Shown piece by piece: positions 603-47,314 of a stretch of DNA of 64,000 nt. How positions within the stretch are numbered: position 1 is the first letter of the stretch; each line of letters opens with the position of its first letter. The DNA is taken from sequence record MH460460.1; one strand, written 5' to 3'. The notes under the pieces were generated by a model, which did no database searches, was not told where the DNA came from, and saw nothing but the letters and a program-made list of their open reading frames with translations. Both the position numbers and the translations under genes were made by a program.

Positions 603-628
603 GGGGCGCTTCGGTGCCCCATTTTTTT
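603..628 (+). terminator. Intrinsic terminator
   Basis: GGGGCGC-TTCG-GTGCCCC followed by a T run. Confidence 0.85.
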
Positions 629-26605: not shown

Positions 26606-27423
26606 GGCTTACCGTGAAAAACTATGCGACTCTTTCTGAGTTAGTATCTGGCGTTCGATTCGCTCTTGTGGTGGAACGTATGAACGTCTCTGAACTTAAT
26701 CCGGACTTTGTGAACGAGCTTGAAAAAGCAGAGGCCAGCGCTCATCCAAAAGAATTGCAGAACTACGCAATCGCTGCTCTGCAAAACTGTAAATTCTCCA
26801 TAACCAAAACTGTTCTGAATCAGGTTAGCAGTATGGCGGCAGAACATCCATTGTTTGATCGTCCGTTTGAAATCATTTCTGACGCCGACATTAAACAGTT
26901 TCTGATTTCTCTCCCTAGTGAGAAATTGGTTACTGCGTGCCGCGCCTGTAACGTTCTTGTAGACCACGGACACCTTCGCGATAGCGCGGAAGAGTTAGCA
27001 CGTCTCTCTTCGATTCGTCTGCTTACCTTCATGCCGTCTGCTGAGTTGTCAGAAGTGGAATCTCTGAACCGTCTGGAACTCTTTGCATTCGCTGTCGAAC
27101 ATTTTGTATGGGTTCGCCACGTTCAGAAGATCGATGACTTTTTGAAAACAGCGCTGAGTGAAAAACAGCGTGATGATCTTATGGCAAGTCTCGGCGTCGA
27201 TATTACCGACGAAGATTATGAAACAGATATCGACGAAAACATATCTGCGGAACTCGTCGCAACCGGACTCGACGTATTGCAAGACGATGCTGATTGGGTC
27301 GATTGGTCAAGCTGGACTCCAGAAGATCCGACGCTCGATGTTTTCGAAGCGCTCAAATACTCGTATGAAAAACTTACGCCCGAAACCGCAAAGTCTGCGC
27401 GTGATGCGTTAAAGGATAACTAA
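26602..27423 (+). CDS. Acidic helical protein with HeH-like modules
   Basis: GTG start; repeated S/T-xx-E/Q-L-xx-L...G pattern. Confidence 0.75.
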   Translation: MRLTVKNYATLSELVSGVRFALVVERMNVSELNPDFVNELEKAEASAHPKELQNYAIAALQNCKFSITKTVLNQVSSMAAEHPLFDRPFEIISDADIKQFLISLPSEKLVTACRACNVLVDHGHLRDSAEELARLSSIRLLTFMPSAELSEVESLNRLELFAFAVEHFVWVRHVQKIDDFLKTALSEKQRDDLMASLGVDITDEDYETDIDENISAELVATGLDVLQDDADWVDWSSWTPEDPTLDVFEALKYSYEKLTPETAKSARDALKDN

Positions 27424-27430
27424 GGCAACT

Positions 27431-28042
27431 ATGATGAAACAGATCACTTCCGAAGCAGTAATTGGTCGTTTGCTTAATGAGGGTGAATGGTGGTACGCGC
27501 TGGCTTTGTTCTCGGACAAAGATCTGATGGCGCTGTTGCAGTCAATGGGAATTGAAAACGTAGCCAATCAACCGCGAACTAAAATAGTTCTGGTGCTTTC
27601 GCAGCGTCTTTCAGAGAGCGGTAAATACATTGATTTGATCCGCGATTACTTCAATCAGAATTTCCTTGTGCCGTTTGAAATCCCTACGCACAAATCTGAA
27701 TTGTGGTTTAACTTCGGCGACTGCGAAGCGATGGTATCTCAACGGCTGATTAACAGCGAATACGATATCAATATCGATCCGCAAATTCACAAAGATTTTG
27801 TTCTCGACGCGCTCACCATTGAGCAACTTCGCGAAGTGTATAACATCAACAACATCGCTGATGAAGACTTCAAAGATAAAGATCGTGAATGGCTGATTGA
27901 ACAAATCAACCAAATTGATTTTGTCGAAGAGTACGATAACTTTTTGCGTGACTCCGGCGAACTGTCTCACATCAAAACTGAACACGGTGCAATCATTGAA
28001 TTCTTGTTCGGTTCCGCAATCGTAGAAGAGGATGAAGAATAA
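27431..28042 (+). CDS. Acidic protein with two HeH/Rho-N-like modules
   Basis: SDKDLMALLQSMGI...PRTKIV; TIEQLREVYNINNI...DREWLIEQI. Confidence 0.8.
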   Translation: MMKQITSEAVIGRLLNEGEWWYALALFSDKDLMALLQSMGIENVANQPRTKIVLVLSQRLSESGKYIDLIRDYFNQNFLVPFEIPTHKSELWFNFGDCEAMVSQRLINSEYDINIDPQIHKDFVLDALTIEQLREVYNINNIADEDFKDKDREWLIEQINQIDFVEEYDNFLRDSGELSHIKTEHGAIIEFLFGSAIVEEDEE

Positions 28043-43138: not shown

Positions 43139-43669
43139 ATGAAATTCCGTAATGCCGAAAACGTTGCTGCTTTGCTTGTGTTGAATCTGAAAACATACAG
43201 CGACGAGAAAGAAAAAGATTTAAAACGCGTTCTTATCGGCGCAAGCAATCTCGCTGAACTGTTTGGCTACACAAACAACTATATTGAACCTGAGAAACTT
43301 AAAGAACTTGAGTTTCATTTGCGCCAGCGCGGTTATCTGTTCTTCGTTTTTGAAAGCGGTATATATGGAATGCTCCGTATCTCTACGCTGGCAAACTGGC
43401 CTCGCATTGCAATGTCACGCATTGAGGCGGCGTTAGATTTGCCGCTGGAAGATATTGAATCGCTAATCAATGCAGATTCAAATGATCAAGGTGTTCCGCT
43501 CGATAAAGAAAATGATCTCTATCCTAATACGTGGAGTTTTGATCGTATCCAACAATACTTTTTCAAACATCTTACTGATTTGGATATTAGCGCGTACACA
43601 ACTCGGCAAGCGGCCTGCTTAGTTCAAAGGCATATGCGCAAACACAATATCGTTCCGGCGAAGGGTTAA
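43139..43669 (+). CDS. Hypothetical protein
   Basis: GGAG RBS. Confidence 0.8.
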   Translation: MKFRNAENVAALLVLNLKTYSDEKEKDLKRVLIGASNLAELFGYTNNYIEPEKLKELEFHLRQRGYLFFVFESGIYGMLRISTLANWPRIAMSRIEAALDLPLEDIESLINADSNDQGVPLDKENDLYPNTWSFDRIQQYFFKHLTDLDISAYTTRQAACLVQRHMRKHNIVPAKG

Positions 43670-43674
43670 AAATC

Positions 43675-44052
43675 ATGGGATACATTGATCAGCTTGTTTC
43701 AAATCACAATCTGTCTGCGCAAGAGCGTCGCCAGAAATACAGCACGTTCGTAGCCAAAACCGCGCCTAAAAAATCCGGCGATGTTGTTCGTATTGATCTG
43801 ATTCGTGCGATGGCTTTTGTTGGTGAAACGAATTTTAGTGAAGAGGCGCAGTTGAAATTCGTTTCTGATTACAACTCGGTGCTTTCGTATGAAGAACATC
43901 CGTGCTTCATGTATCGCACAATCGAAGGTGAATACGCGCACCGCAATTGCAGACACGTCACTTACGTTGTTCGTTTACCGAAACGCGGTGATAAAATTTC
44001 AGAAGCGATGATTGATGACGGTTCGATCATCGTTGGTGGGAGTAAATTCTGA
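43675..44052 (+). CDS. Hypothetical protein
   Basis: 125-aa ORF; TGATG overlap with the next gene. Confidence 0.75.
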   Translation: MGYIDQLVSNHNLSAQERRQKYSTFVAKTAPKKSGDVVRIDLIRAMAFVGETNFSEEAQLKFVSDYNSVLSYEEHPCFMYRTIEGEYAHRNCRHVTYVVRLPKRGDKISEAMIDDGSIIVGGSKF

Positions 44053-44417
44053 TGCCAACAATCGAAGAAGTAAAAAACAGCGCAACCATTTATCAGTTTC
44101 TACACAATCCTTATGGTGTAGTTCGCGCCGGAACCTACAAGCCAAATCTTTTGGATTGTTGGGCGTTGGTTGTCGATACCATTCCGAAATGCTTTATCGC
44201 GCTTTGGGGAAAGATGTGTGAATTAAGCTGGCATATGTCGATTCGCCGTCTGCTTATTTGGTTGCTGTTTATGCCGTTCTGGATTCTGATTGTTGTGCCA
44301 ATGCCGCTCACTTTCTGGATTTGGGGAACGTATGTTTATTTCTACATGCGCGGCGAACCTGAGCGCCATAAGAAAGTTCAGGAACGTCTTAACCGGAAGT
44401 TAGATTCTCTAGTGTAG
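44052..44417 (+). CDS. Membrane protein
   Basis: LLIWLLFMPFWILIVVPMPLTFWIWGTYVYF. Confidence 0.8.
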   Translation: MPTIEEVKNSATIYQFLHNPYGVVRAGTYKPNLLDCWALVVDTIPKCFIALWGKMCELSWHMSIRRLLIWLLFMPFWILIVVPMPLTFWIWGTYVYFYMRGEPERHKKVQERLNRKLDSLV

Positions 44418-44473
44418 TCTGCAAAATAGTGTCCAAAATTTCGGTGGTTTTTGCCGCCTCGTTTTGATACACT
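44417..44473 (+). promoter_or_regulatory. Bipartite-box promoter, copy 8
   Basis: GTCTGCAAA-ATAG-TGTCCAAAA-N29-TACACT. Confidence 0.8.
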
Positions 44474-44479
44474 ATTTGG

Positions 44480-44553
44480 ACAGGGCAGCAATGCCCTACA
44501 AGATTCAACGTGAAGTGGAAACTTTTTGTAGGCAGGGAAGCCTACACTTTTTT
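44480..44553 (+). ncRNA. Putative ~73-nt small RNA
   Basis: Between promoter copy 8 and a terminator; 5' GCAA-tetraloop hairpin; no RBS-bearing ORF. Confidence 0.55.
44527..44553 (+). terminator. Intrinsic terminator
   Basis: TGTAGGC-AGGGAA-GCCTACA-C-TTTTTT. Confidence 0.8.
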
Positions 44554-44578
44554 GCAAAGTCTCCTACTAAGGGGGGAA

Positions 44579-44635
44579 CTCTGCAAAATAGTGTCCAAAA
44601 TTGCGATTGATAATATCGCTACTTTCCATCACTAT
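44579..44635 (+). promoter_or_regulatory. Bipartite-box promoter, copy 9
   Basis: CTCTGCAAA-ATAG-TGTCCAAAA; TTGATA at the -35 position; CACTAT at N29. Confidence 0.75.
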
Positions 44636-44701
44636 TTAATCTCACTCGGCGCAGTGCCGAAACAAACAAGCCTTAACTAATATTTCTTAGGAGAAATAAT
44701 C

Positions 44702-46315
44702 ATGGCAATTGCAACCTCTACCAAACTGATCGGCAAAAACATCGTTCTGCTGGACGGCACCAAAACCAAAATCACTGACGCAATGGCAACTGGTTATAAA
44801 GTTGCTGATCGTACTGTTCGCGTTGCGTCAAAGCAAGTTGCTAAGAAAGGCGCTTGCTATTACGAAATCCCGGTTACGTCTCTGCGTGAACTGATCGATT
44901 CCGGTGAAGGTTATGTTTCTTTCGCTGACAAAGCGATGCAGAAAAAAGTCGGCACTGATGCTTTCCTTGAAAAACCTGCTAAAACTTCTGGCCGCAAACC
45001 GAAAGAAGAGAAAACTTCTGGCCGCAAACCGAAAGAAGAGAAAACTTCTAACGTGCGTCCGAAACGTGGTAGCAAACCTACCAAAGAAGAAGACGAAGCC
45101 GAAGAAAAATCATCACGTCGCGTTAAACGTCGCGGCAATAGCGATGCAGGTTTCGGCGCTCTCGCTGACTTCCTGATCAACGGCGGTAACAGCAAGAAGA
45201 AAGTTTCTCTCTCCACAATCGATCAGGATCTGGCGACTGTTCTTACTGAACGTCTGGTTAGCACGGTTAAAGATACCTCGCTGGCTAAATTCGACCGCAA
45301 CAATGCGCTGATCGAAAACGCATTTGATGTTGGCTACTCAACTGAATTCGATGCGACTGGCGGTGACGTTCGCGTAACGCTCAATATCAAATACGCGCTG
45401 GAACAACCGGAACCGGAAGAAGTAAGCGGCGGTTTCGAAATCTCTCCGGAACTGGCGAAGAAAATCAAAGCGCGTGTTGGTAAAACTGTTGGCAAAAAAC
45501 TGGCTGCGGCAATCGCTGGACACCTCGGCGTTGAAGCAAGCGATATGACAGCGGGAACTCTGCTGGTTCGTGAAGGTGAGGATGGTCAGTTTGTTTTCTG
45601 CGGCGCAAGCAGCGAAGACAATAACAAAGCTGTTCTGTTCAACACTGAAAGCGAAAAATTCCGTACTGTAGGCGGCGCGTCTCTGGCTAACTACTCCATC
45701 GTCGAAGAAGACGAAGAGGAAGAGGAAGACGAAGAAGACGAAGACGAAGAAGAAATTGAAGAGGAAGAGGACGAAGACGAAGACGACGGCGAAGCCGAAG
45801 ACGACGATGCCGAAGACGATTCCGAAGAAGGCGAAGATGACGCGGAAGGTGAAGACGACGATTCCGAAGATGCTTTCGAATACGCTTCCGTAAATAAAAA
45901 GCAACTGGCGAACGTAGACAAAAAGATCACGGCTAAAAATCTGCCGATGCTGTCTAAACTTTGGGGCGTGCCGCAAAGCGCTCTGATTACTGGTCTGAAA
46001 CTGACAGACGGCGATGATACTTTTGTGTTTATCGGTATGGACGAAGACGGCGATCTGCTGGTTGTCGAAGAAGGCGCGAAGGAAGTTGTAGCATTTGACG
46101 CTGACGATATCTCAAGCCTGTCTGGTTACTCTCCGGTTGTTGGTGAAGCCGAAGACGACGCAGAAGAAGATGGCGAAGATTTCGAAGATGACGGCGAAGA
46201 CTACGACGATATGGACATTGACGAACTGCGCGATGTTGTAGTTCAGAAAGGTCTGGCAAAAGTTCGCGCCGCCGAAAACATGACGGAGAAAAAACTCCGC
46301 GCTCTGCTGAAATAA
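44702..46315 (+). CDS. Modular protein: basic N-terminal region, two repeated domains, D/E tracts, C-terminal HeH-like module
   Basis: AGGAG RBS; 537 aa; C-terminal DDMDIDELRDVVVQKGL...MTEKKLRALLK. Confidence 0.9.
   Translation: MAIATSTKLIGKNIVLLDGTKTKITDAMATGYKVADRTVRVASKQVAKKGACYYEIPVTSLRELIDSGEGYVSFADKAMQKKVGTDAFLEKPAKTSGRKPKEEKTSGRKPKEEKTSNVRPKRGSKPTKEEDEAEEKSSRRVKRRGNSDAGFGALADFLINGGNSKKKVSLSTIDQDLATVLTERLVSTVKDTSLAKFDRNNALIENAFDVGYSTEFDATGGDVRVTLNIKYALEQPEPEEVSGGFEISPELAKKIKARVGKTVGKKLAAAIAGHLGVEASDMTAGTLLVREGEDGQFVFCGASSEDNNKAVLFNTESEKFRTVGGASLANYSIVEEDEEEEEDEEDEDEEEIEEEEDEDEDDGEAEDDDAEDDSEEGEDDAEGEDDDSEDAFEYASVNKKQLANVDKKITAKNLPMLSKLWGVPQSALITGLKLTDGDDTFVFIGMDEDGDLLVVEEGAKEVVAFDADDISSLSGYSPVVGEAEDDAEEDGEDFEDDGEDYDDMDIDELRDVVVQKGLAKVRAAENMTEKKLRALLK
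44981..45049 (+). repeat. Perfect 30-bp coding tandem repeat, 2.3 copies (KTSGRKPKEE)
   Basis: AAAACTTCTGGCCGCAAACCGAAAGAAGAG at 44981 and 45011, partial copy at 45041. Confidence 0.95.
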
Positions 46316-46381: not shown

Positions 46382-47314
46382 ATGAAAATGGCTATCACTC
46401 CTAACAAAGATTTGGTTAACGTTGTTGTTCGTCTGCTGGATGGCAAAACTTCTCGCATCACTGGCATTACTAAAACTGGTTACACGGTTGAAGGTTCTGA
46501 TAAGCAAATTCCGATGACGGAACTTGTGCGTAAAGGCCGCGTGTTGCAGCAACTCGATCCGGCGAAGCTGAAAGAAATTCCGGCTGAACAAACTTATCTG
46601 ATGAGCGACGGCTATCTGCATATCCATACCCGCGATGCAATGCGCCGCATCAAGAAAGGCGAGACGGTTGATATCCCGCCGTCAAATTCTGAATGGCTGC
46701 GCAAAACCAAAACGGTGAAGGTTGTGAAAGTGAAAGGCGAATCTAAGCCTAAAAAGATTACGCCGAACAAACCTGTTCGCGCTGACGCTTCTAAAGTTAA
46801 GGCTCCGAAGCGTCTTAAAACTGACGCGCAGAAAACTAAAAAGGTTGTGGCAAAAGCTGCGCCTAAATCAACTCCGGTTGATCGTAGCGCCGAAACTGCT
46901 GAGACGTTGTTCCTAGTAATCGAAAACGCTCGCACGAATCGCAAAGCGTTTAAAGAGTTTAAAGCGATTGTCTCGGCTGCGATGGGTGTTACGGCAAAAG
47001 ATCTGCCGGATACTGCAAGCGAGATCATCGAAAAATTCGGCGCTGCGAAAGTACGCAAAGGTCTGGCGGCTCTGTCTGAGCATTTCAATCGCCGCCGTGC
47101 GGAACTGAGTTTGCCTCGTAGCTTGAAAGCGTTTATCTCAAGCGGTCGCTTAACTCTGACTCCTGCGCAATTCCGTCAAGTGCTGGAAGTAATCGCTCCG
47201 ACGATTCCGAAAGAGATTGTTGCTGACGTTGCTAAGTATTATTTCAACGGCGAATTCGTTATCAGCAAAACCCCGGATCGCAACACCACGAAAAAATCTA
47301 ACGGTGGCAATTAA
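46382..47314 (+). CDS. Basic (Lys-rich) protein whose N-terminal domain is homologous to that of 44702..46315
   Basis: RLLDGKTSRITGITKTGYTV vs VLLDGTKTKITDAMATGYKV. Confidence 0.85.
   Translation: MKMAITPNKDLVNVVVRLLDGKTSRITGITKTGYTVEGSDKQIPMTELVRKGRVLQQLDPAKLKEIPAEQTYLMSDGYLHIHTRDAMRRIKKGETVDIPPSNSEWLRKTKTVKVVKVKGESKPKKITPNKPVRADASKVKAPKRLKTDAQKTKKVVAKAAPKSTPVDRSAETAETLFLVIENARTNRKAFKEFKAIVSAAMGVTAKDLPDTASEIIEKFGAAKVRKGLAALSEHFNRRRAELSLPRSLKAFISSGRLTLTPAQFRQVLEVIAPTIPKEIVADVAKYYFNGEFVISKTPDRNTTKKSNGGN

What the first reader, a model, noticed from the sequence alone, without database searches (positions are those of the whole stretch)
44480..44553. Putative phage small RNA with its own promoter and terminator
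Seen: promoter copy 8 (-10 at 44468-44473) is followed by a hairpin AGGGCA-GCAA-TGCCCT. Then come ~30 unpaired nt (ACAAGATTCAACGTGAAGTGGAAACTTTT) and a terminator TGTAGGC/GCCTACA with T6. A second copy of the same promoter (44579) then restarts transcription for the next gene, so copy 8 seems dedicated to this short unit. The only ATG (44491) has no RBS. Established: a 5' hairpin, single-stranded seed and intrinsic terminator with U tail is the layout of Hfq-type base-pairing sRNAs. Inference: a regulatory or anti-defence sRNA.
Basis: partly seen in the sequence, partly recalled or inferred. Interest (0 to 1): 0.72.

Follow-up and report, generated by a model that had tools for sequence, protein, structure and literature searches.

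The report
Orphan promoter-terminator small RNA candidate
A jumbo phage of the potato pathogen Dickeya solani carries a promoter that leads only to a roughly 74-base structured RNA ending at a terminator; relatives keep the same layout, so it is a credible but unproven phage small RNA gene, and its supposed targeting stretch is its least conserved part.

Summary
The window is the last 64 kb of Dickeya phage vB_DsoM_JA13 (Salmondvirus).

Promoter copy 8 is the only one of 10 copies of a phage promoter family with no gene behind it. It is followed by:
- a 5' hairpin,
- 29 mostly unpaired bases,
- a U-rich tract,
- a 7-bp terminator hairpin and T6.

Copy 9 then serves gene JA13_306.

The same layout sits directly upstream of the JA13_306 homologue in three diverged uncultivated relatives and, with unrelated sequence, in several Erwinia jumbo phages. 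Both hairpins keep pairing through compensatory changes. The 39-aa ORF is not conserved.

Points against the simple Hfq-seed reading:
- The unpaired "seed" is the fastest-evolving segment (44-58% identity).
- The U tail has 6 or 5 residues, below the 7 reported as needed for Hfq.
- No target scored above the shuffled-seed null.
- A conserved 15-19-bp hairpin begins at the terminator's T-run and can only form in read-through RNA.

Best reading (confidence 0.4): an early, independently transcribed small RNA with a conserved protein-binding 3' scaffold and a variable 5' part. Main rival: a cis-acting terminated leader or insulator for JA13_306. No expression data exist.

The parts
44052..44417 (+). 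Upstream gene JA13_305 (121 aa, PHROG 2638, function unknown). Its stop codon abuts promoter copy 8.
   Evidence: Annotation; PHROG hit. In relatives L029-L031 another gene lies between the JA13_305 homologue and the unit.
44418..44473 (+). Promoter copy 8 (P1): upstream motif 44418-44439, weak -35-like TGGTTT at 44445-44450, 17-nt spacer, -10-like TACACT at 44468-44473.
   Evidence: The family has a -10-like TAnnnT at a fixed 49 nt from the motif start in 9 of 10 copies. The generic sigma-70 scan does not flag it because the -35 is poor.
44443..44466 (+). Terminator-like hairpin plus T-rich tail inside the spacer of P1. It is a possible stop for the upstream operon.
   Evidence: Listed. The homologous arrangement occurs in Yoloswag P1. 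The stem is only partly kept in JA29.
44480..44553 (+). Predicted 74-nt non-coding RNA, from the inferred start to the end of T6.
   Evidence: Fold at -23.6 kcal/mol, z = -3.26. No Rfam family and no tRNA. Homologous units in JA29, L029, L030 and L031.
44482..44497 (+). 5' hairpin: 6 bp with a GCAA loop.
   Evidence: Two of its 6 pairs show changes on both sides that keep pairing, and 93% of cells are paired. Similar start-proximal hairpins follow most copies of the promoter family.
44498..44526 (+). It holds an invariant UGGAAC (GGA at 44517-44519) and a U-rich tract at 44523-44526.
   Evidence: The 5' part (44498-44515) is 58% and 44% identical to L029 and L031, the lowest of any segment. 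The consensus fold predicts no pairs here.
44527..44553 (+). Intrinsic terminator: 7-bp stem, 6-nt loop containing GGA (44536-44538), then C and T6 (44548-44553).
   Evidence: One compensatory A-U to G-C pair, and 97% of cells paired. The 3' module 44516-44553 is 92% and 79% identical to L029 and L031.
44545..44593 (+). Long hairpin b (19 bp). Its 5' arm is the T-run plus GCAAAGTCTCC; its 3' arm is the distal motif of promoter copy 9. It can form only in RNA that reads past the T-run.
   Evidence: It is 15-19 bp with z from -3.9 to -6.1 in all 8 lineages examined. Among 5 Erwinia phages there are 17 consensus pairs, 4 of them compensatory.
44580..44635 (+). Promoter copy 9 (P2): motif 44580-44601, -35-like TTGATA at 44607-44612, 17-nt spacer, CACTAT at 44630-44635.
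   Evidence: The CACTAT and the 17-nt spacer after TTGAnA are kept in JA29, L029 and L031.
44636..44701 (+). 5' UTR of JA13_306, with a start-proximal hairpin at 44646-44660 and a Shine-Dalgarno AGGAG.
   Evidence: This is the most conserved segment of the locus, 89-91% identical to L029 and L031.
44702..46315 (+). JA13_306: 537 aa, a conserved N-terminal domain and a long acidic tail (PHROG 33433, function unknown). In every relative that has the unit, it lies directly upstream of this gene's own promoter.

Best explanation
Window 44480-44553 is a small non-coding RNA gene of phage JA13.

Proposed mechanism:
1. Host RNA polymerase starts at promoter copy 8. This promoter belongs to a family confined to the region of small genes of unknown function that also holds the topoisomerase genes. 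That it is early and sigma-70-driven is inferred.
2. The polymerase transcribes a 5' stabilising hairpin and a variable unpaired stretch.
3. It stops at the intrinsic terminator, releasing an RNA of about 70-74 nt.

The conserved, functional part is the 3' scaffold: UGGAAC, a U-rich tract, a hairpin with GGA in its loop, and a U tail. That is the layout bound by host RNA chaperones, Hfq above all. The fast-evolving 5' stretch would give each lineage its own pairing specificity. This resembles the prophage anti-sRNAs of E. coli O157, which have variable 5' ends on a conserved 3' region. Alternatively the 5' stretch may be a mere spacer.

Shown here: the sequence elements, their conservation, and the covariation in both hairpins.
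Inferred: transcription, the start point, termination efficiency, chaperone binding, and any target.
For: - Copy 8 is the only one of 10 family promoters without a downstream ORF.
- The module P1 / short unit / terminator / P2 / JA13_306 homologue is kept in JA29, L029, L030 and L031. JA13_305 protein identity there falls to 58-75%.
- In L029-L031 an extra gene separates the JA13_305 homologue from the unit. The unit therefore stays with JA13_306, not with the upstream gene's end.
- Analogous units with a good -10 (TAnnnT) and strong terminators occur in Erwinia phages Y3, pEa_SNUABM_25, pEa_SNUABM_30 and Yoloswag.
- Compensatory changes occur at 3 of 13 pairs, and 95% of cells are paired against 31-43% for slid controls.
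- The start codon of the only ORF is lost in relatives.
- A U-rich tract precedes the terminator stem in the Dickeya clade and in Y3, pEa_SNUABM_25, pEa_SNUABM_30 and Yoloswag, though not at pEa_SNUABM_5's main terminator. Only 2 of 13 + strand terminators in the window have one. This is the class I Hfq-module layout (PMC5558911, PMC7367173).
- The 3' module is 92% and 79% identical to L029 and L031, while the 5' stretch is 58% and 44%. Conserved 3' region plus variable 5' end is the pattern reported for phage anti-sRNAs (PMC4104026).
- Erwinia terminators have 9-12-bp GC-rich stems, so their P1 transcripts should rarely reach the gene.
Against: - There are no expression data for any phage of this group.
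- The U tail has 6 residues, or 5 in most Erwinia analogues. Seven or more were reported as necessary for stable Hfq binding (PMC5558911).
- The presumed seed is the least conserved segment.
- No phage RNA pairs with it better than with shuffled seeds: best non-self -27.8 and -25.6 kcal/mol, against null bests of -24.6 to -27.2.
- There is no consistent pairing with the cognate JA13_306 leader.
- Conservation between JA13 and JA29 is unremarkable: 19% of all 74-nt windows are as conserved.
- The unit is absent from most Alexandravirus phages and from Yersinia phage fHe-Yen9-02.
- Hairpin b is conserved yet can only exist in read-through RNA.
- The host genome was not available for target prediction.
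Confidence: 0.4

Rival explanations
1. Cis-acting terminated leader or insulator. Copies 8 and 9 are tandem promoters for JA13_306, separated by a leaky terminator. The short RNA is a by-product. What matters is how much transcription, from copy 8 or from the upstream operon, passes the terminator. Read-through RNA then folds hairpin b, which marks it for processing. This would resemble lambda sib, where a double-strand-specific nuclease site forms only in read-through RNA (general knowledge, not tested here).
For: - Hairpin b is 15-19 bp and starts at the T-run in all 8 lineages. It has compensatory changes, and only read-through RNA can fold it.
- The unit is always linked to JA13_306.
- The JA13 terminator is modest: 7 bp, a C spacer, and T6.
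- The variable middle stretch behaves like a spacer.
- No trans target was found.
Against: - A second complete promoter lies between the terminator and the gene, so copy 8 is not needed to express it.
- Erwinia analogues end in strong 9-12-bp terminators, and Yoloswag has two in series.
- The one antiterminator pairing I could see (44493-44500 with 44527-44533) is not possible in L029, L031 or pEa_SNUABM_25. This is by inspection.
- The conserved U-rich 5' flank has no role in this model.
Confidence: 0.28
2. Protein decoy for the host regulator CsrA/RsmA. The two conserved GGA motifs lie 19 nt apart, one single-stranded (44517-44519) and one in the terminator loop (44536-44538). Together they would bind one RsmA dimer and titrate it.
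For: - Both GGA motifs are kept in all five Dickeya-clade sequences, although the loop sequence changes (AGGGAA, AAGGAA, AAUGGAUG).
- The loop resembles the SELEX consensus quoted in PMC7652899.
- That review gives 10-63 nt as the workable distance between two sites.
Against: - There are only two sites, whereas known decoys carry many.
- The stem is 7 bp, while SELEX ligands mostly had 4 or fewer contiguous pairs (PMC7652899).
- The Y3 and pEa_SNUABM_25 analogues have no GGA in any loop.
- GGA is short and this is a post-hoc observation.
Confidence: 0.08
3. No function of its own. The terminator ends the upstream operon, and copy 8 is a redundant duplicate of copy 9 that happens to lie before it.
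For: - The 22-nt motifs of copies 8 and 9 are identical in JA13, as expected after a recent duplication or gene conversion.
- A terminator followed by a promoter is the normal layout at copies 2 and 5.
- The unit is missing in several relatives.
Against: - The tandem layout is shared by phages of different genera whose JA13_306 homologues are only about 33-38% identical over the whole protein.
- In L029 and L031 the two motifs are not identical.
- P1 keeps a good -10 in every lineage that has the unit.
- Hairpins are maintained by compensatory changes.
- P1 already contains a terminator-like hairpin that could serve the upstream operon.
Confidence: 0.12
4. Small protein: the 39-aa ORF starting at ATG 44491.
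For: The ORF exists. The one indel in JA29 and JA33 is 3 nt long.
Against: - There is no Shine-Dalgarno sequence.
- The ATG lies inside the hairpin.
- The ORF runs through the terminator and the next promoter.
- The ATG reads ACG in L029, L030 and L031.
- No ORF is shared with the Erwinia analogues.
Confidence: 0.02
5. Other roles: a replication-origin primer RNA, a CRISPR-repeat mimic, or another anti-defence RNA.
For: Only the general layout, a strong promoter with a short structured transcript.
Against: - Cumulative GC skew rises steadily across the window with no turn at 44.5 kb.
- Gene orientation switches at about 41 kb and 175 kb of the record, far from the finding.
- The terminator hairpin pattern has 6 single matches in unrelated environmental genomes among 185,579 species. 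None is in Enterobacterales and none forms an array.
- The unit is single-copy in the genome.
Confidence: 0.04

Closest known systems
Class I Hfq-binding trans-acting sRNAs of Enterobacterales (SgrS and RyhB type; Hfq-binding module as in PMC5558911 and PMC7367173)
   Same: Own promoter, size of 50-100 nt, unpaired region, a U-rich tract directly 5' of a Rho-independent terminator hairpin, and a 3' U run.
   Different: The U run is 6 or 5 rather than 7 or more. The unpaired region is the least, not the most, conserved part. No target was found. Hfq binding is untested. The RNA is encoded by a lytic jumbo phage.
Prophage-encoded anti-sRNAs AgvB and AsxR of E. coli O157 (PMC4104026)
   Same: Phage-borne, short, with a conserved 3' region and variable 5' end and a terminator with U-U motifs 5' of the stem. 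They work by pairing with a host sRNA.
   Different: They are 51-60 nt and lie 3' of PR' in lambdoid prophages. No sequence likeness was shown. The GcvB target consensus quoted in that paper (CACAACA) is absent from the JA13, L029 and L031 RNAs.
Short terminated transcripts of phage lambda: oop and the pR'-tR' 6S RNA (from general knowledge), and the newly reported lambda sRNA LPR1/PreS (bioRxiv 10.1101/2024.10.31.621285)
   Same: A phage promoter followed after tens of bases by an intrinsic terminator. The short RNA can itself be a regulator.
   Different: oop is antisense to a gene, whereas nothing is encoded opposite here. The 6S leader has no second promoter after its terminator and depends on an antiterminator protein. 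There is no sequence or Rfam likeness.
Read-through-specific nuclease hairpins, such as lambda sib retroregulation and the T7 early intercistronic sites (general knowledge)
   Same: Hairpin b is a long, nearly perfect hairpin between transcription units. It is completed only when the terminator is read through.
   Different: It is 15-19 bp, at the lower limit for such sites. Cleavage is untested. Its 5' arm is the terminator's U run rather than the terminator stem.

Membership tests
Hfq-binding class I sRNA | Independent transcription unit (own promoter) or a processed 3' end of an mRNA | tested here: inconclusive
   A complete copy of the phage promoter family lies 7 nt upstream of the inferred start. 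No transcription data exist.
Hfq-binding class I sRNA | Rho-independent terminator hairpin at the 3' end | tested here: met
   7-bp stem at 44527-44546 plus a T-run. Pairing is kept by a compensatory change in L031.
Hfq-binding class I sRNA | 3' poly(U) of seven or more residues (PMC5558911) | tested here: not met
   T6 in JA13, JA29, L029, L030 and L031. T5 in Y3, pEa_SNUABM_25, pEa_SNUABM_30 and Yoloswag.
Hfq-binding class I sRNA | U-rich sequence immediately 5' of the terminator hairpin (PMC5558911, PMC7367173) | tested here: met
   CUUUUU at 44522-44527. Present in the Dickeya clade and in Y3, pEa_SNUABM_25, pEa_SNUABM_30 and Yoloswag, but not at pEa_SNUABM_5's main terminator. Only 2 of 13 + strand terminators in the window have it.
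Hfq-binding class I sRNA | Conserved single-stranded seed complementary to target mRNAs | tested here: not met
   The 5' part of the unpaired stretch is 58% and 44% identical, the lowest in the locus. No phage target scored above the null. The host genome was not available.
Hfq-binding class I sRNA | Physical binding to Hfq and dependence on it | not testable with these tools
   This needs RNA co-purification data from infected cells.
Phage anti-sRNA (AgvB/AsxR type, PMC4104026) | Conserved 3' region with a variable 5' end | tested here: met
   The 3' module is 92% and 79% identical, against 58% and 44% for the 5' stretch.
Phage anti-sRNA (AgvB/AsxR type, PMC4104026) | 51-60 nt, located 3' of PR' in lambdoid prophages, and mimicking the target site of a host sRNA (CACAACA for GcvB) | tested here: not met
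   Length is 73-83 nt in a lytic jumbo phage. The quoted consensus is absent from the JA13, L029 and L031 units.
Terminated leader with antitermination (lambda pR'-tR' type) or attenuator | Promoter, then a terminator, upstream of the regulated gene with no further promoter between | tested here: not met
   Promoter copy 9 lies between the terminator and JA13_306 in JA13 and in all relatives with the unit.
Terminated leader with antitermination (lambda pR'-tR' type) or attenuator | Conserved alternative (antiterminator) pairing, or a site for an antiterminator protein | tested here: inconclusive
   The only alternative pairing seen in JA13 is not possible in L029, L031 or pEa_SNUABM_25 (inspection). 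Protein sites cannot be tested.
CsrA/RsmA-sequestering RNA | Several GGA motifs, preferably in hairpin loops, 10-63 nt apart (PMC7652899) | tested here: inconclusive
   Two GGA motifs, 19 nt apart, one in the terminator loop, conserved in the Dickeya clade. None lies in loops of the Y3 or pEa_SNUABM_25 analogues.
CRISPR-repeat mimic (RNA anti-CRISPR) | Sequence likeness to CRISPR repeats of the host | tested here: not met
   The terminator hairpin pattern gave 6 single, unrelated matches among genomes of 185,579 species and no arrays. Only this hairpin was tested.
Any curated RNA family (Rfam 15) | Score at or above the family's gathering threshold | tested here: not met
   There were 0 matches in the whole window. 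With lax settings only two chance-level hits to unrelated families, at E about 3.

The most novel reading that the evidence does not exclude
A modular riboregulator family of lytic jumbo phages (Salmondvirus, Sasquatchvirus, Yoloswagvirus and relatives). It would combine a conserved chaperone-binding 3' scaffold, a hypervariable 5' targeting stretch, and a long hairpin that forms only in read-through RNA. The whole is always placed directly before the promoter of one acidic-protein gene. The phage would use it early in infection to take over host post-transcriptional control (Hfq or RsmA networks) in plant-pathogenic Enterobacterales. The read-through hairpin would act as a built-in switch between "small RNA" and "leader" fates of the same transcript.
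Probability: 0.2. Interest if true: 0.7.

Novelty: new member of a known kind. Interest (0 to 1): 0.45.

Why it matters
Small RNAs of lytic phages, and of jumbo phages in particular, are barely charted. No transcriptome exists for this group of phages, which infect the crop pathogens Dickeya and Erwinia and are studied for biocontrol.

If the RNA is made, it would be an unannotated early gene product conserved across several genera. It would also be a compact case for asking how a virulent phage interferes with host RNA chaperone networks.

The comparative result also gives three concrete things to look for in expression data:
- a primary 5' end near 44480,
- 3' ends at 44548-44553,
- ends inside hairpin b (44545-44593).

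If the RNA is not made, the locus is an ordinary tandem promoter with an insulating terminator.

Tried and rejected
1. Conservation against JA29 as evidence of constraint: rejected. 73 of 74 identical is matched by 19% of all 74-nt windows.
2. Phage targets of the unpaired stretch: duplex scan of both strands of the whole genome, locus by locus. The best non-self hits are no better than 12 shuffled seeds give, and the best one lies on the non-coding strand.
3. Pairing of each unit with its own JA13_306 leader: inconsistent, with null fractions from 0.02 to 0.83.
4. A covariance model of the five Dickeya-clade units: it found no second copy in the JA13 genome and did not recognise the Erwinia units. 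The next best hit had E = 1.4 and lay antisense inside a gene.
5. More relatives:
   - The first protein-pattern scan of viral contigs failed because of the acidic repeats.
   - The N-terminal alignment then gave 21 loci.
   - The metagenome scan with the post-terminator 20-mer returned only copies identical to L029 plus chance matches.
6. CRISPR-repeat or host-derived origin of the terminator hairpin: no support.
7. Rfam at gathering and at lax thresholds, and tRNA/tmRNA search: nothing.
8. Replication origin: no GC-skew turn in the window.
9. Function of neighbouring genes: no Pfam family, PHROGs of unknown function only, and no solved relative of the JA13_306 N-terminal domain.
10. The 39-aa ORF: rejected because the start codon is lost in relatives.
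11. An antiterminator pairing seen in JA13: not conserved.
12. A GcvB-mimic motif: absent.
13. Literature: the genome paper mentions neither promoters nor terminators, and no transcriptome study of these genera is in the library.

The sigma-70 hexamers used are those printed by the tool, and the CsrA and GcvB motifs are quoted from PMC7652899 and PMC4104026.

Full report
**Identity of the window.** The window is identical to the last 64 kb of Dickeya phage vB_DsoM_JA13 (MH460460.1, 254,061 bp, genus Salmondvirus). Window position equals record position minus 190,061. The finding lies in the 284-nt gap between JA13_305 (44052-44417) and JA13_306 (44702-46315), both annotated as hypothetical. 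The records carry no RNA, promoter or terminator features. The genome paper mentions none. The phage group has no RNA polymerase of its own but does encode sigma factors (PMC7412058).

- The sequence shows the 22-nt upstream motif at 44418-44439 and a -10-like TACACT at 44468-44473.
- The hairpin is at 44482-44497, followed by 29 mostly unpaired bases.
- The 7-bp terminator hairpin is at 44527-44546, with T6 at 44548-44553.
- An identical copy of the motif is at 44580-44601.
- The 74-nt RNA folds as described at -23.6 kcal/mol, z = -3.26.

**The promoter family.**
- It has 10 copies, all on the + strand and all between record positions 199.6 and 246 kb. There is no convincing copy in the other 190 kb.
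- In 9 of 10 copies a TAnnnT hexamer lies 49 nt from the motif start.
- Nine copies lie 31-87 nt upstream of an annotated start codon.
- Copy 8 is the only orphan.
- The 5' hairpin is not special. Most family members are followed by a short GC-rich hairpin next to the inferred start.

**Close relatives say little.** JA33 is identical over the unit, and JA29 differs at one loop base. However, 19% of all 74-nt windows of the JA13-JA29 alignment are at least as conserved. That comparison carries no weight.

**Diverged relatives are informative.** JA13_306 has homologues at the same genomic position in Erwinia, Yersinia and uncultivated jumbo phages.
- Three uncultivated relatives have a clearly homologous module: promoter, short unit, terminator, second promoter, gene. 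These are L029 (also recovered as L055 and L058), L030 and L031. Their JA13_305 homologues are 58-75% identical in protein.
- In these relatives an additional gene lies between the JA13_305 homologue and the unit. The unit therefore stays next to JA13_306 rather than with the end of the upstream gene.
- On the five-sequence alignment, 95% of cells pair, against 31-43% when partners are slid. Three of 13 pairs show changes on both sides that keep pairing: two in the 5' hairpin and one in the terminator.
- An independent consensus fold finds the same two hairpins and nothing in between.
- The ATG at 44491 reads ACG in all three relatives, which disposes of the 39-aa ORF.

**More distant relatives.**
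- Erwinia phages Y3, pEa_SNUABM_25, pEa_SNUABM_30 (and L033) and Yoloswag have the same architecture with unrelated sequence.
- Each has a family promoter with a good -10 and a unit of 57-131 nt. A U-rich tract then precedes a 9-12-bp terminator hairpin, C, T5 and the second promoter.
- The spacer of the first promoter in Yoloswag and JA13 shares a hairpin plus a T-rich run, and ends in the same 12 bases. This argues for common descent.
- In pEa_SNUABM_5 the first promoter looks degenerate.
- Most Alexandravirus phages, Dickeya phage AD1 and Yersinia phage fHe-Yen9-02 have a single promoter and a gap of only 160-185 nt. The unit is therefore old but dispensable.

**Which part is constrained.** Segment-by-segment identity of JA13 to L029 and L031:

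| Segment | vs L029 | vs L031 |
|---|---|---|
| First promoter | 73% | 73% |
| 5' hairpin | 72% | 79% |
| 5' part of the unpaired stretch | 58% | 44% |
| 3' module, from UGGAAC to T6 | 92% | 79% |
| Second promoter | 89% | 78% |
| JA13_306 leader | 89% | 91% |
| Neighbouring coding DNA | 69-81% | 74-77% |

- The presumed seed is the fastest-evolving segment. The conserved part is the 3' scaffold.
- This is the reverse of what a conserved base-pairing seed predicts.
- It is the pattern reported for the prophage anti-sRNAs of E. coli O157, which have a variable 5' end on a conserved 3' region (PMC4104026).
- It also fits a role that rests on the scaffold alone.

**The Hfq question.**
- Uridines dominate the 5' flank in Hfq ligands, and adenosines in ProQ ligands (PMC7367173).
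- Here the U-rich flank is present in nearly all lineages. It is rare among this phage's other terminators, 2 of 13.
- The tail, however, has 6 residues, or 5 in most Erwinia analogues.
- Membership in the Hfq class is therefore not established. One defining feature fails and binding is untestable. The layout still points to that kind of mechanism.

**A second idea.** The scaffold holds two conserved GGA motifs 19 nt apart, one of them in the terminator loop. This fits the geometry of dual-site CsrA/RsmA binding (PMC7652899). The Erwinia analogues lack them, so I rate this low.

- A long hairpin starts at the terminator's T-run (44545-44593, 19 bp). Its 3' arm is the distal motif of promoter copy 9.
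- The same element, 15-19 bp with z from -3.9 to -6.1, is present in all eight lineages examined.
- Among five Erwinia phages it has 17 consensus pairs, four with compensatory changes.
- In Yoloswag and pEa_SNUABM_5 it lies inside the unit, before a second and stronger terminator.
- Because the T-run is its 5' arm, it can only form in RNA that has passed the first termination point. Read-through RNA must therefore exist and matter.
- This keeps a cis-acting leader or insulator model alive. In that model, read-through RNA might be marked for processing, as at lambda sib. That comparison rests on general knowledge and was not tested.

**Negative results.**
- No Rfam family at either threshold, and no tRNA.
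- No second copy in the genome by covariance model.
- No phage target above the shuffled-seed null.
- No consistent pairing with the cognate leader.
- No match of the terminator hairpin in bacterial genomes beyond about the roughly 4 chance matches I estimated, and no arrays. There is thus no sign of a CRISPR-repeat mimic.
- No GC-skew turn near the locus.
- The neighbouring proteins have no known function.
- The host genome could not be searched for targets.
- No transcriptome study of these genera is in the library.

**Verdict.**
- Most likely (0.4) this is a real, independently transcribed small RNA gene. Its conserved part is a chaperone-type 3' scaffold, and its 5' stretch is lineage-specific.
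- A cis-acting terminated leader or insulator for JA13_306 comes next (0.28).
- It would be a new, unannotated member of a known kind, the phage-encoded small RNAs.
- The conserved read-through hairpin is the one truly unexplained element.
- Interest is moderate, because nothing is known about expression.

Noticed in passing
window 9591, 14629, 23426, 30722, 34668, 38749, 42192, 44419, 44581, 55881 (+ strand): A promoter family: a 20-nt upstream motif, 29 nt, then TAnnnT. It is confined to one 46-kb region of the 254-kb genome. It precedes small genes of unknown function, a gene two upstream of the DksA-like gene, and the topoisomerase genes. A related motif precedes the JA13_306 homologues of Erwinia phages.
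   Followed up: partly
window 44545-44593; L014:2826-2867; L016:2806-2845; L022:1294-1338; L024:1234-1279; L015:2729-2770: A conserved 15-19-bp hairpin whose 5' arm is the terminator's T-run. It forms only in read-through RNA, and in Yoloswag and pEa_SNUABM_5 it lies inside the unit. Its function is unexplained.
   Followed up: partly
window 44482-44497, 44646-44660, and just after the -10 of most other promoter copies: Transcripts of the family would begin with a short GC-rich hairpin. Several loops contain GCAA followed by U or C, also in the Erwinia second promoters. This may be a common 5' stabiliser or a protein site.
   Followed up: no
window 44443-44466; L024:1186-1209: A terminator-like hairpin with a T-rich tail sits inside the spacer of promoter copy 8, between the -35 and -10 positions. 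The same arrangement, with a stronger stem, occurs in Yoloswag.
   Followed up: partly
window 44702-46315 and 46382-47314; also about 28.9, 50.3-52.3 and 54.3 kb: JA13_306 and JA13_307 share an N-terminal domain (PHROG 33433) and carry long Asp/Glu-rich tails. Several other genes in the window have similar acidic repeats. There is no Pfam family and no solved relative.
   Followed up: partly
window 43139-43669: JA13_303 is absent from JA29. This is a gene-sized indel 0.8 kb upstream of the finding.
   Followed up: no
window 603-620 (gap 550-666): The only other + strand terminator in the window with a U-rich 5' flank. It has a 7-bp GC-rich stem and a run of eight T, after JA13_224. No family promoter lies upstream.
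   Followed up: no
L009:22221-23463 (record 172,221-173,463); L007:26168-26859 and 27172-27907: Unannotated gaps of 0.7-1.2 kb in the JA13 record, outside the window.
   Followed up: no
L009:18300-18385: A weak covariance-model hit (E = 1.4) sharing the GGAAAC, U-run and hairpin layout, but antisense inside JA13_195. Probably chance.
   Followed up: no
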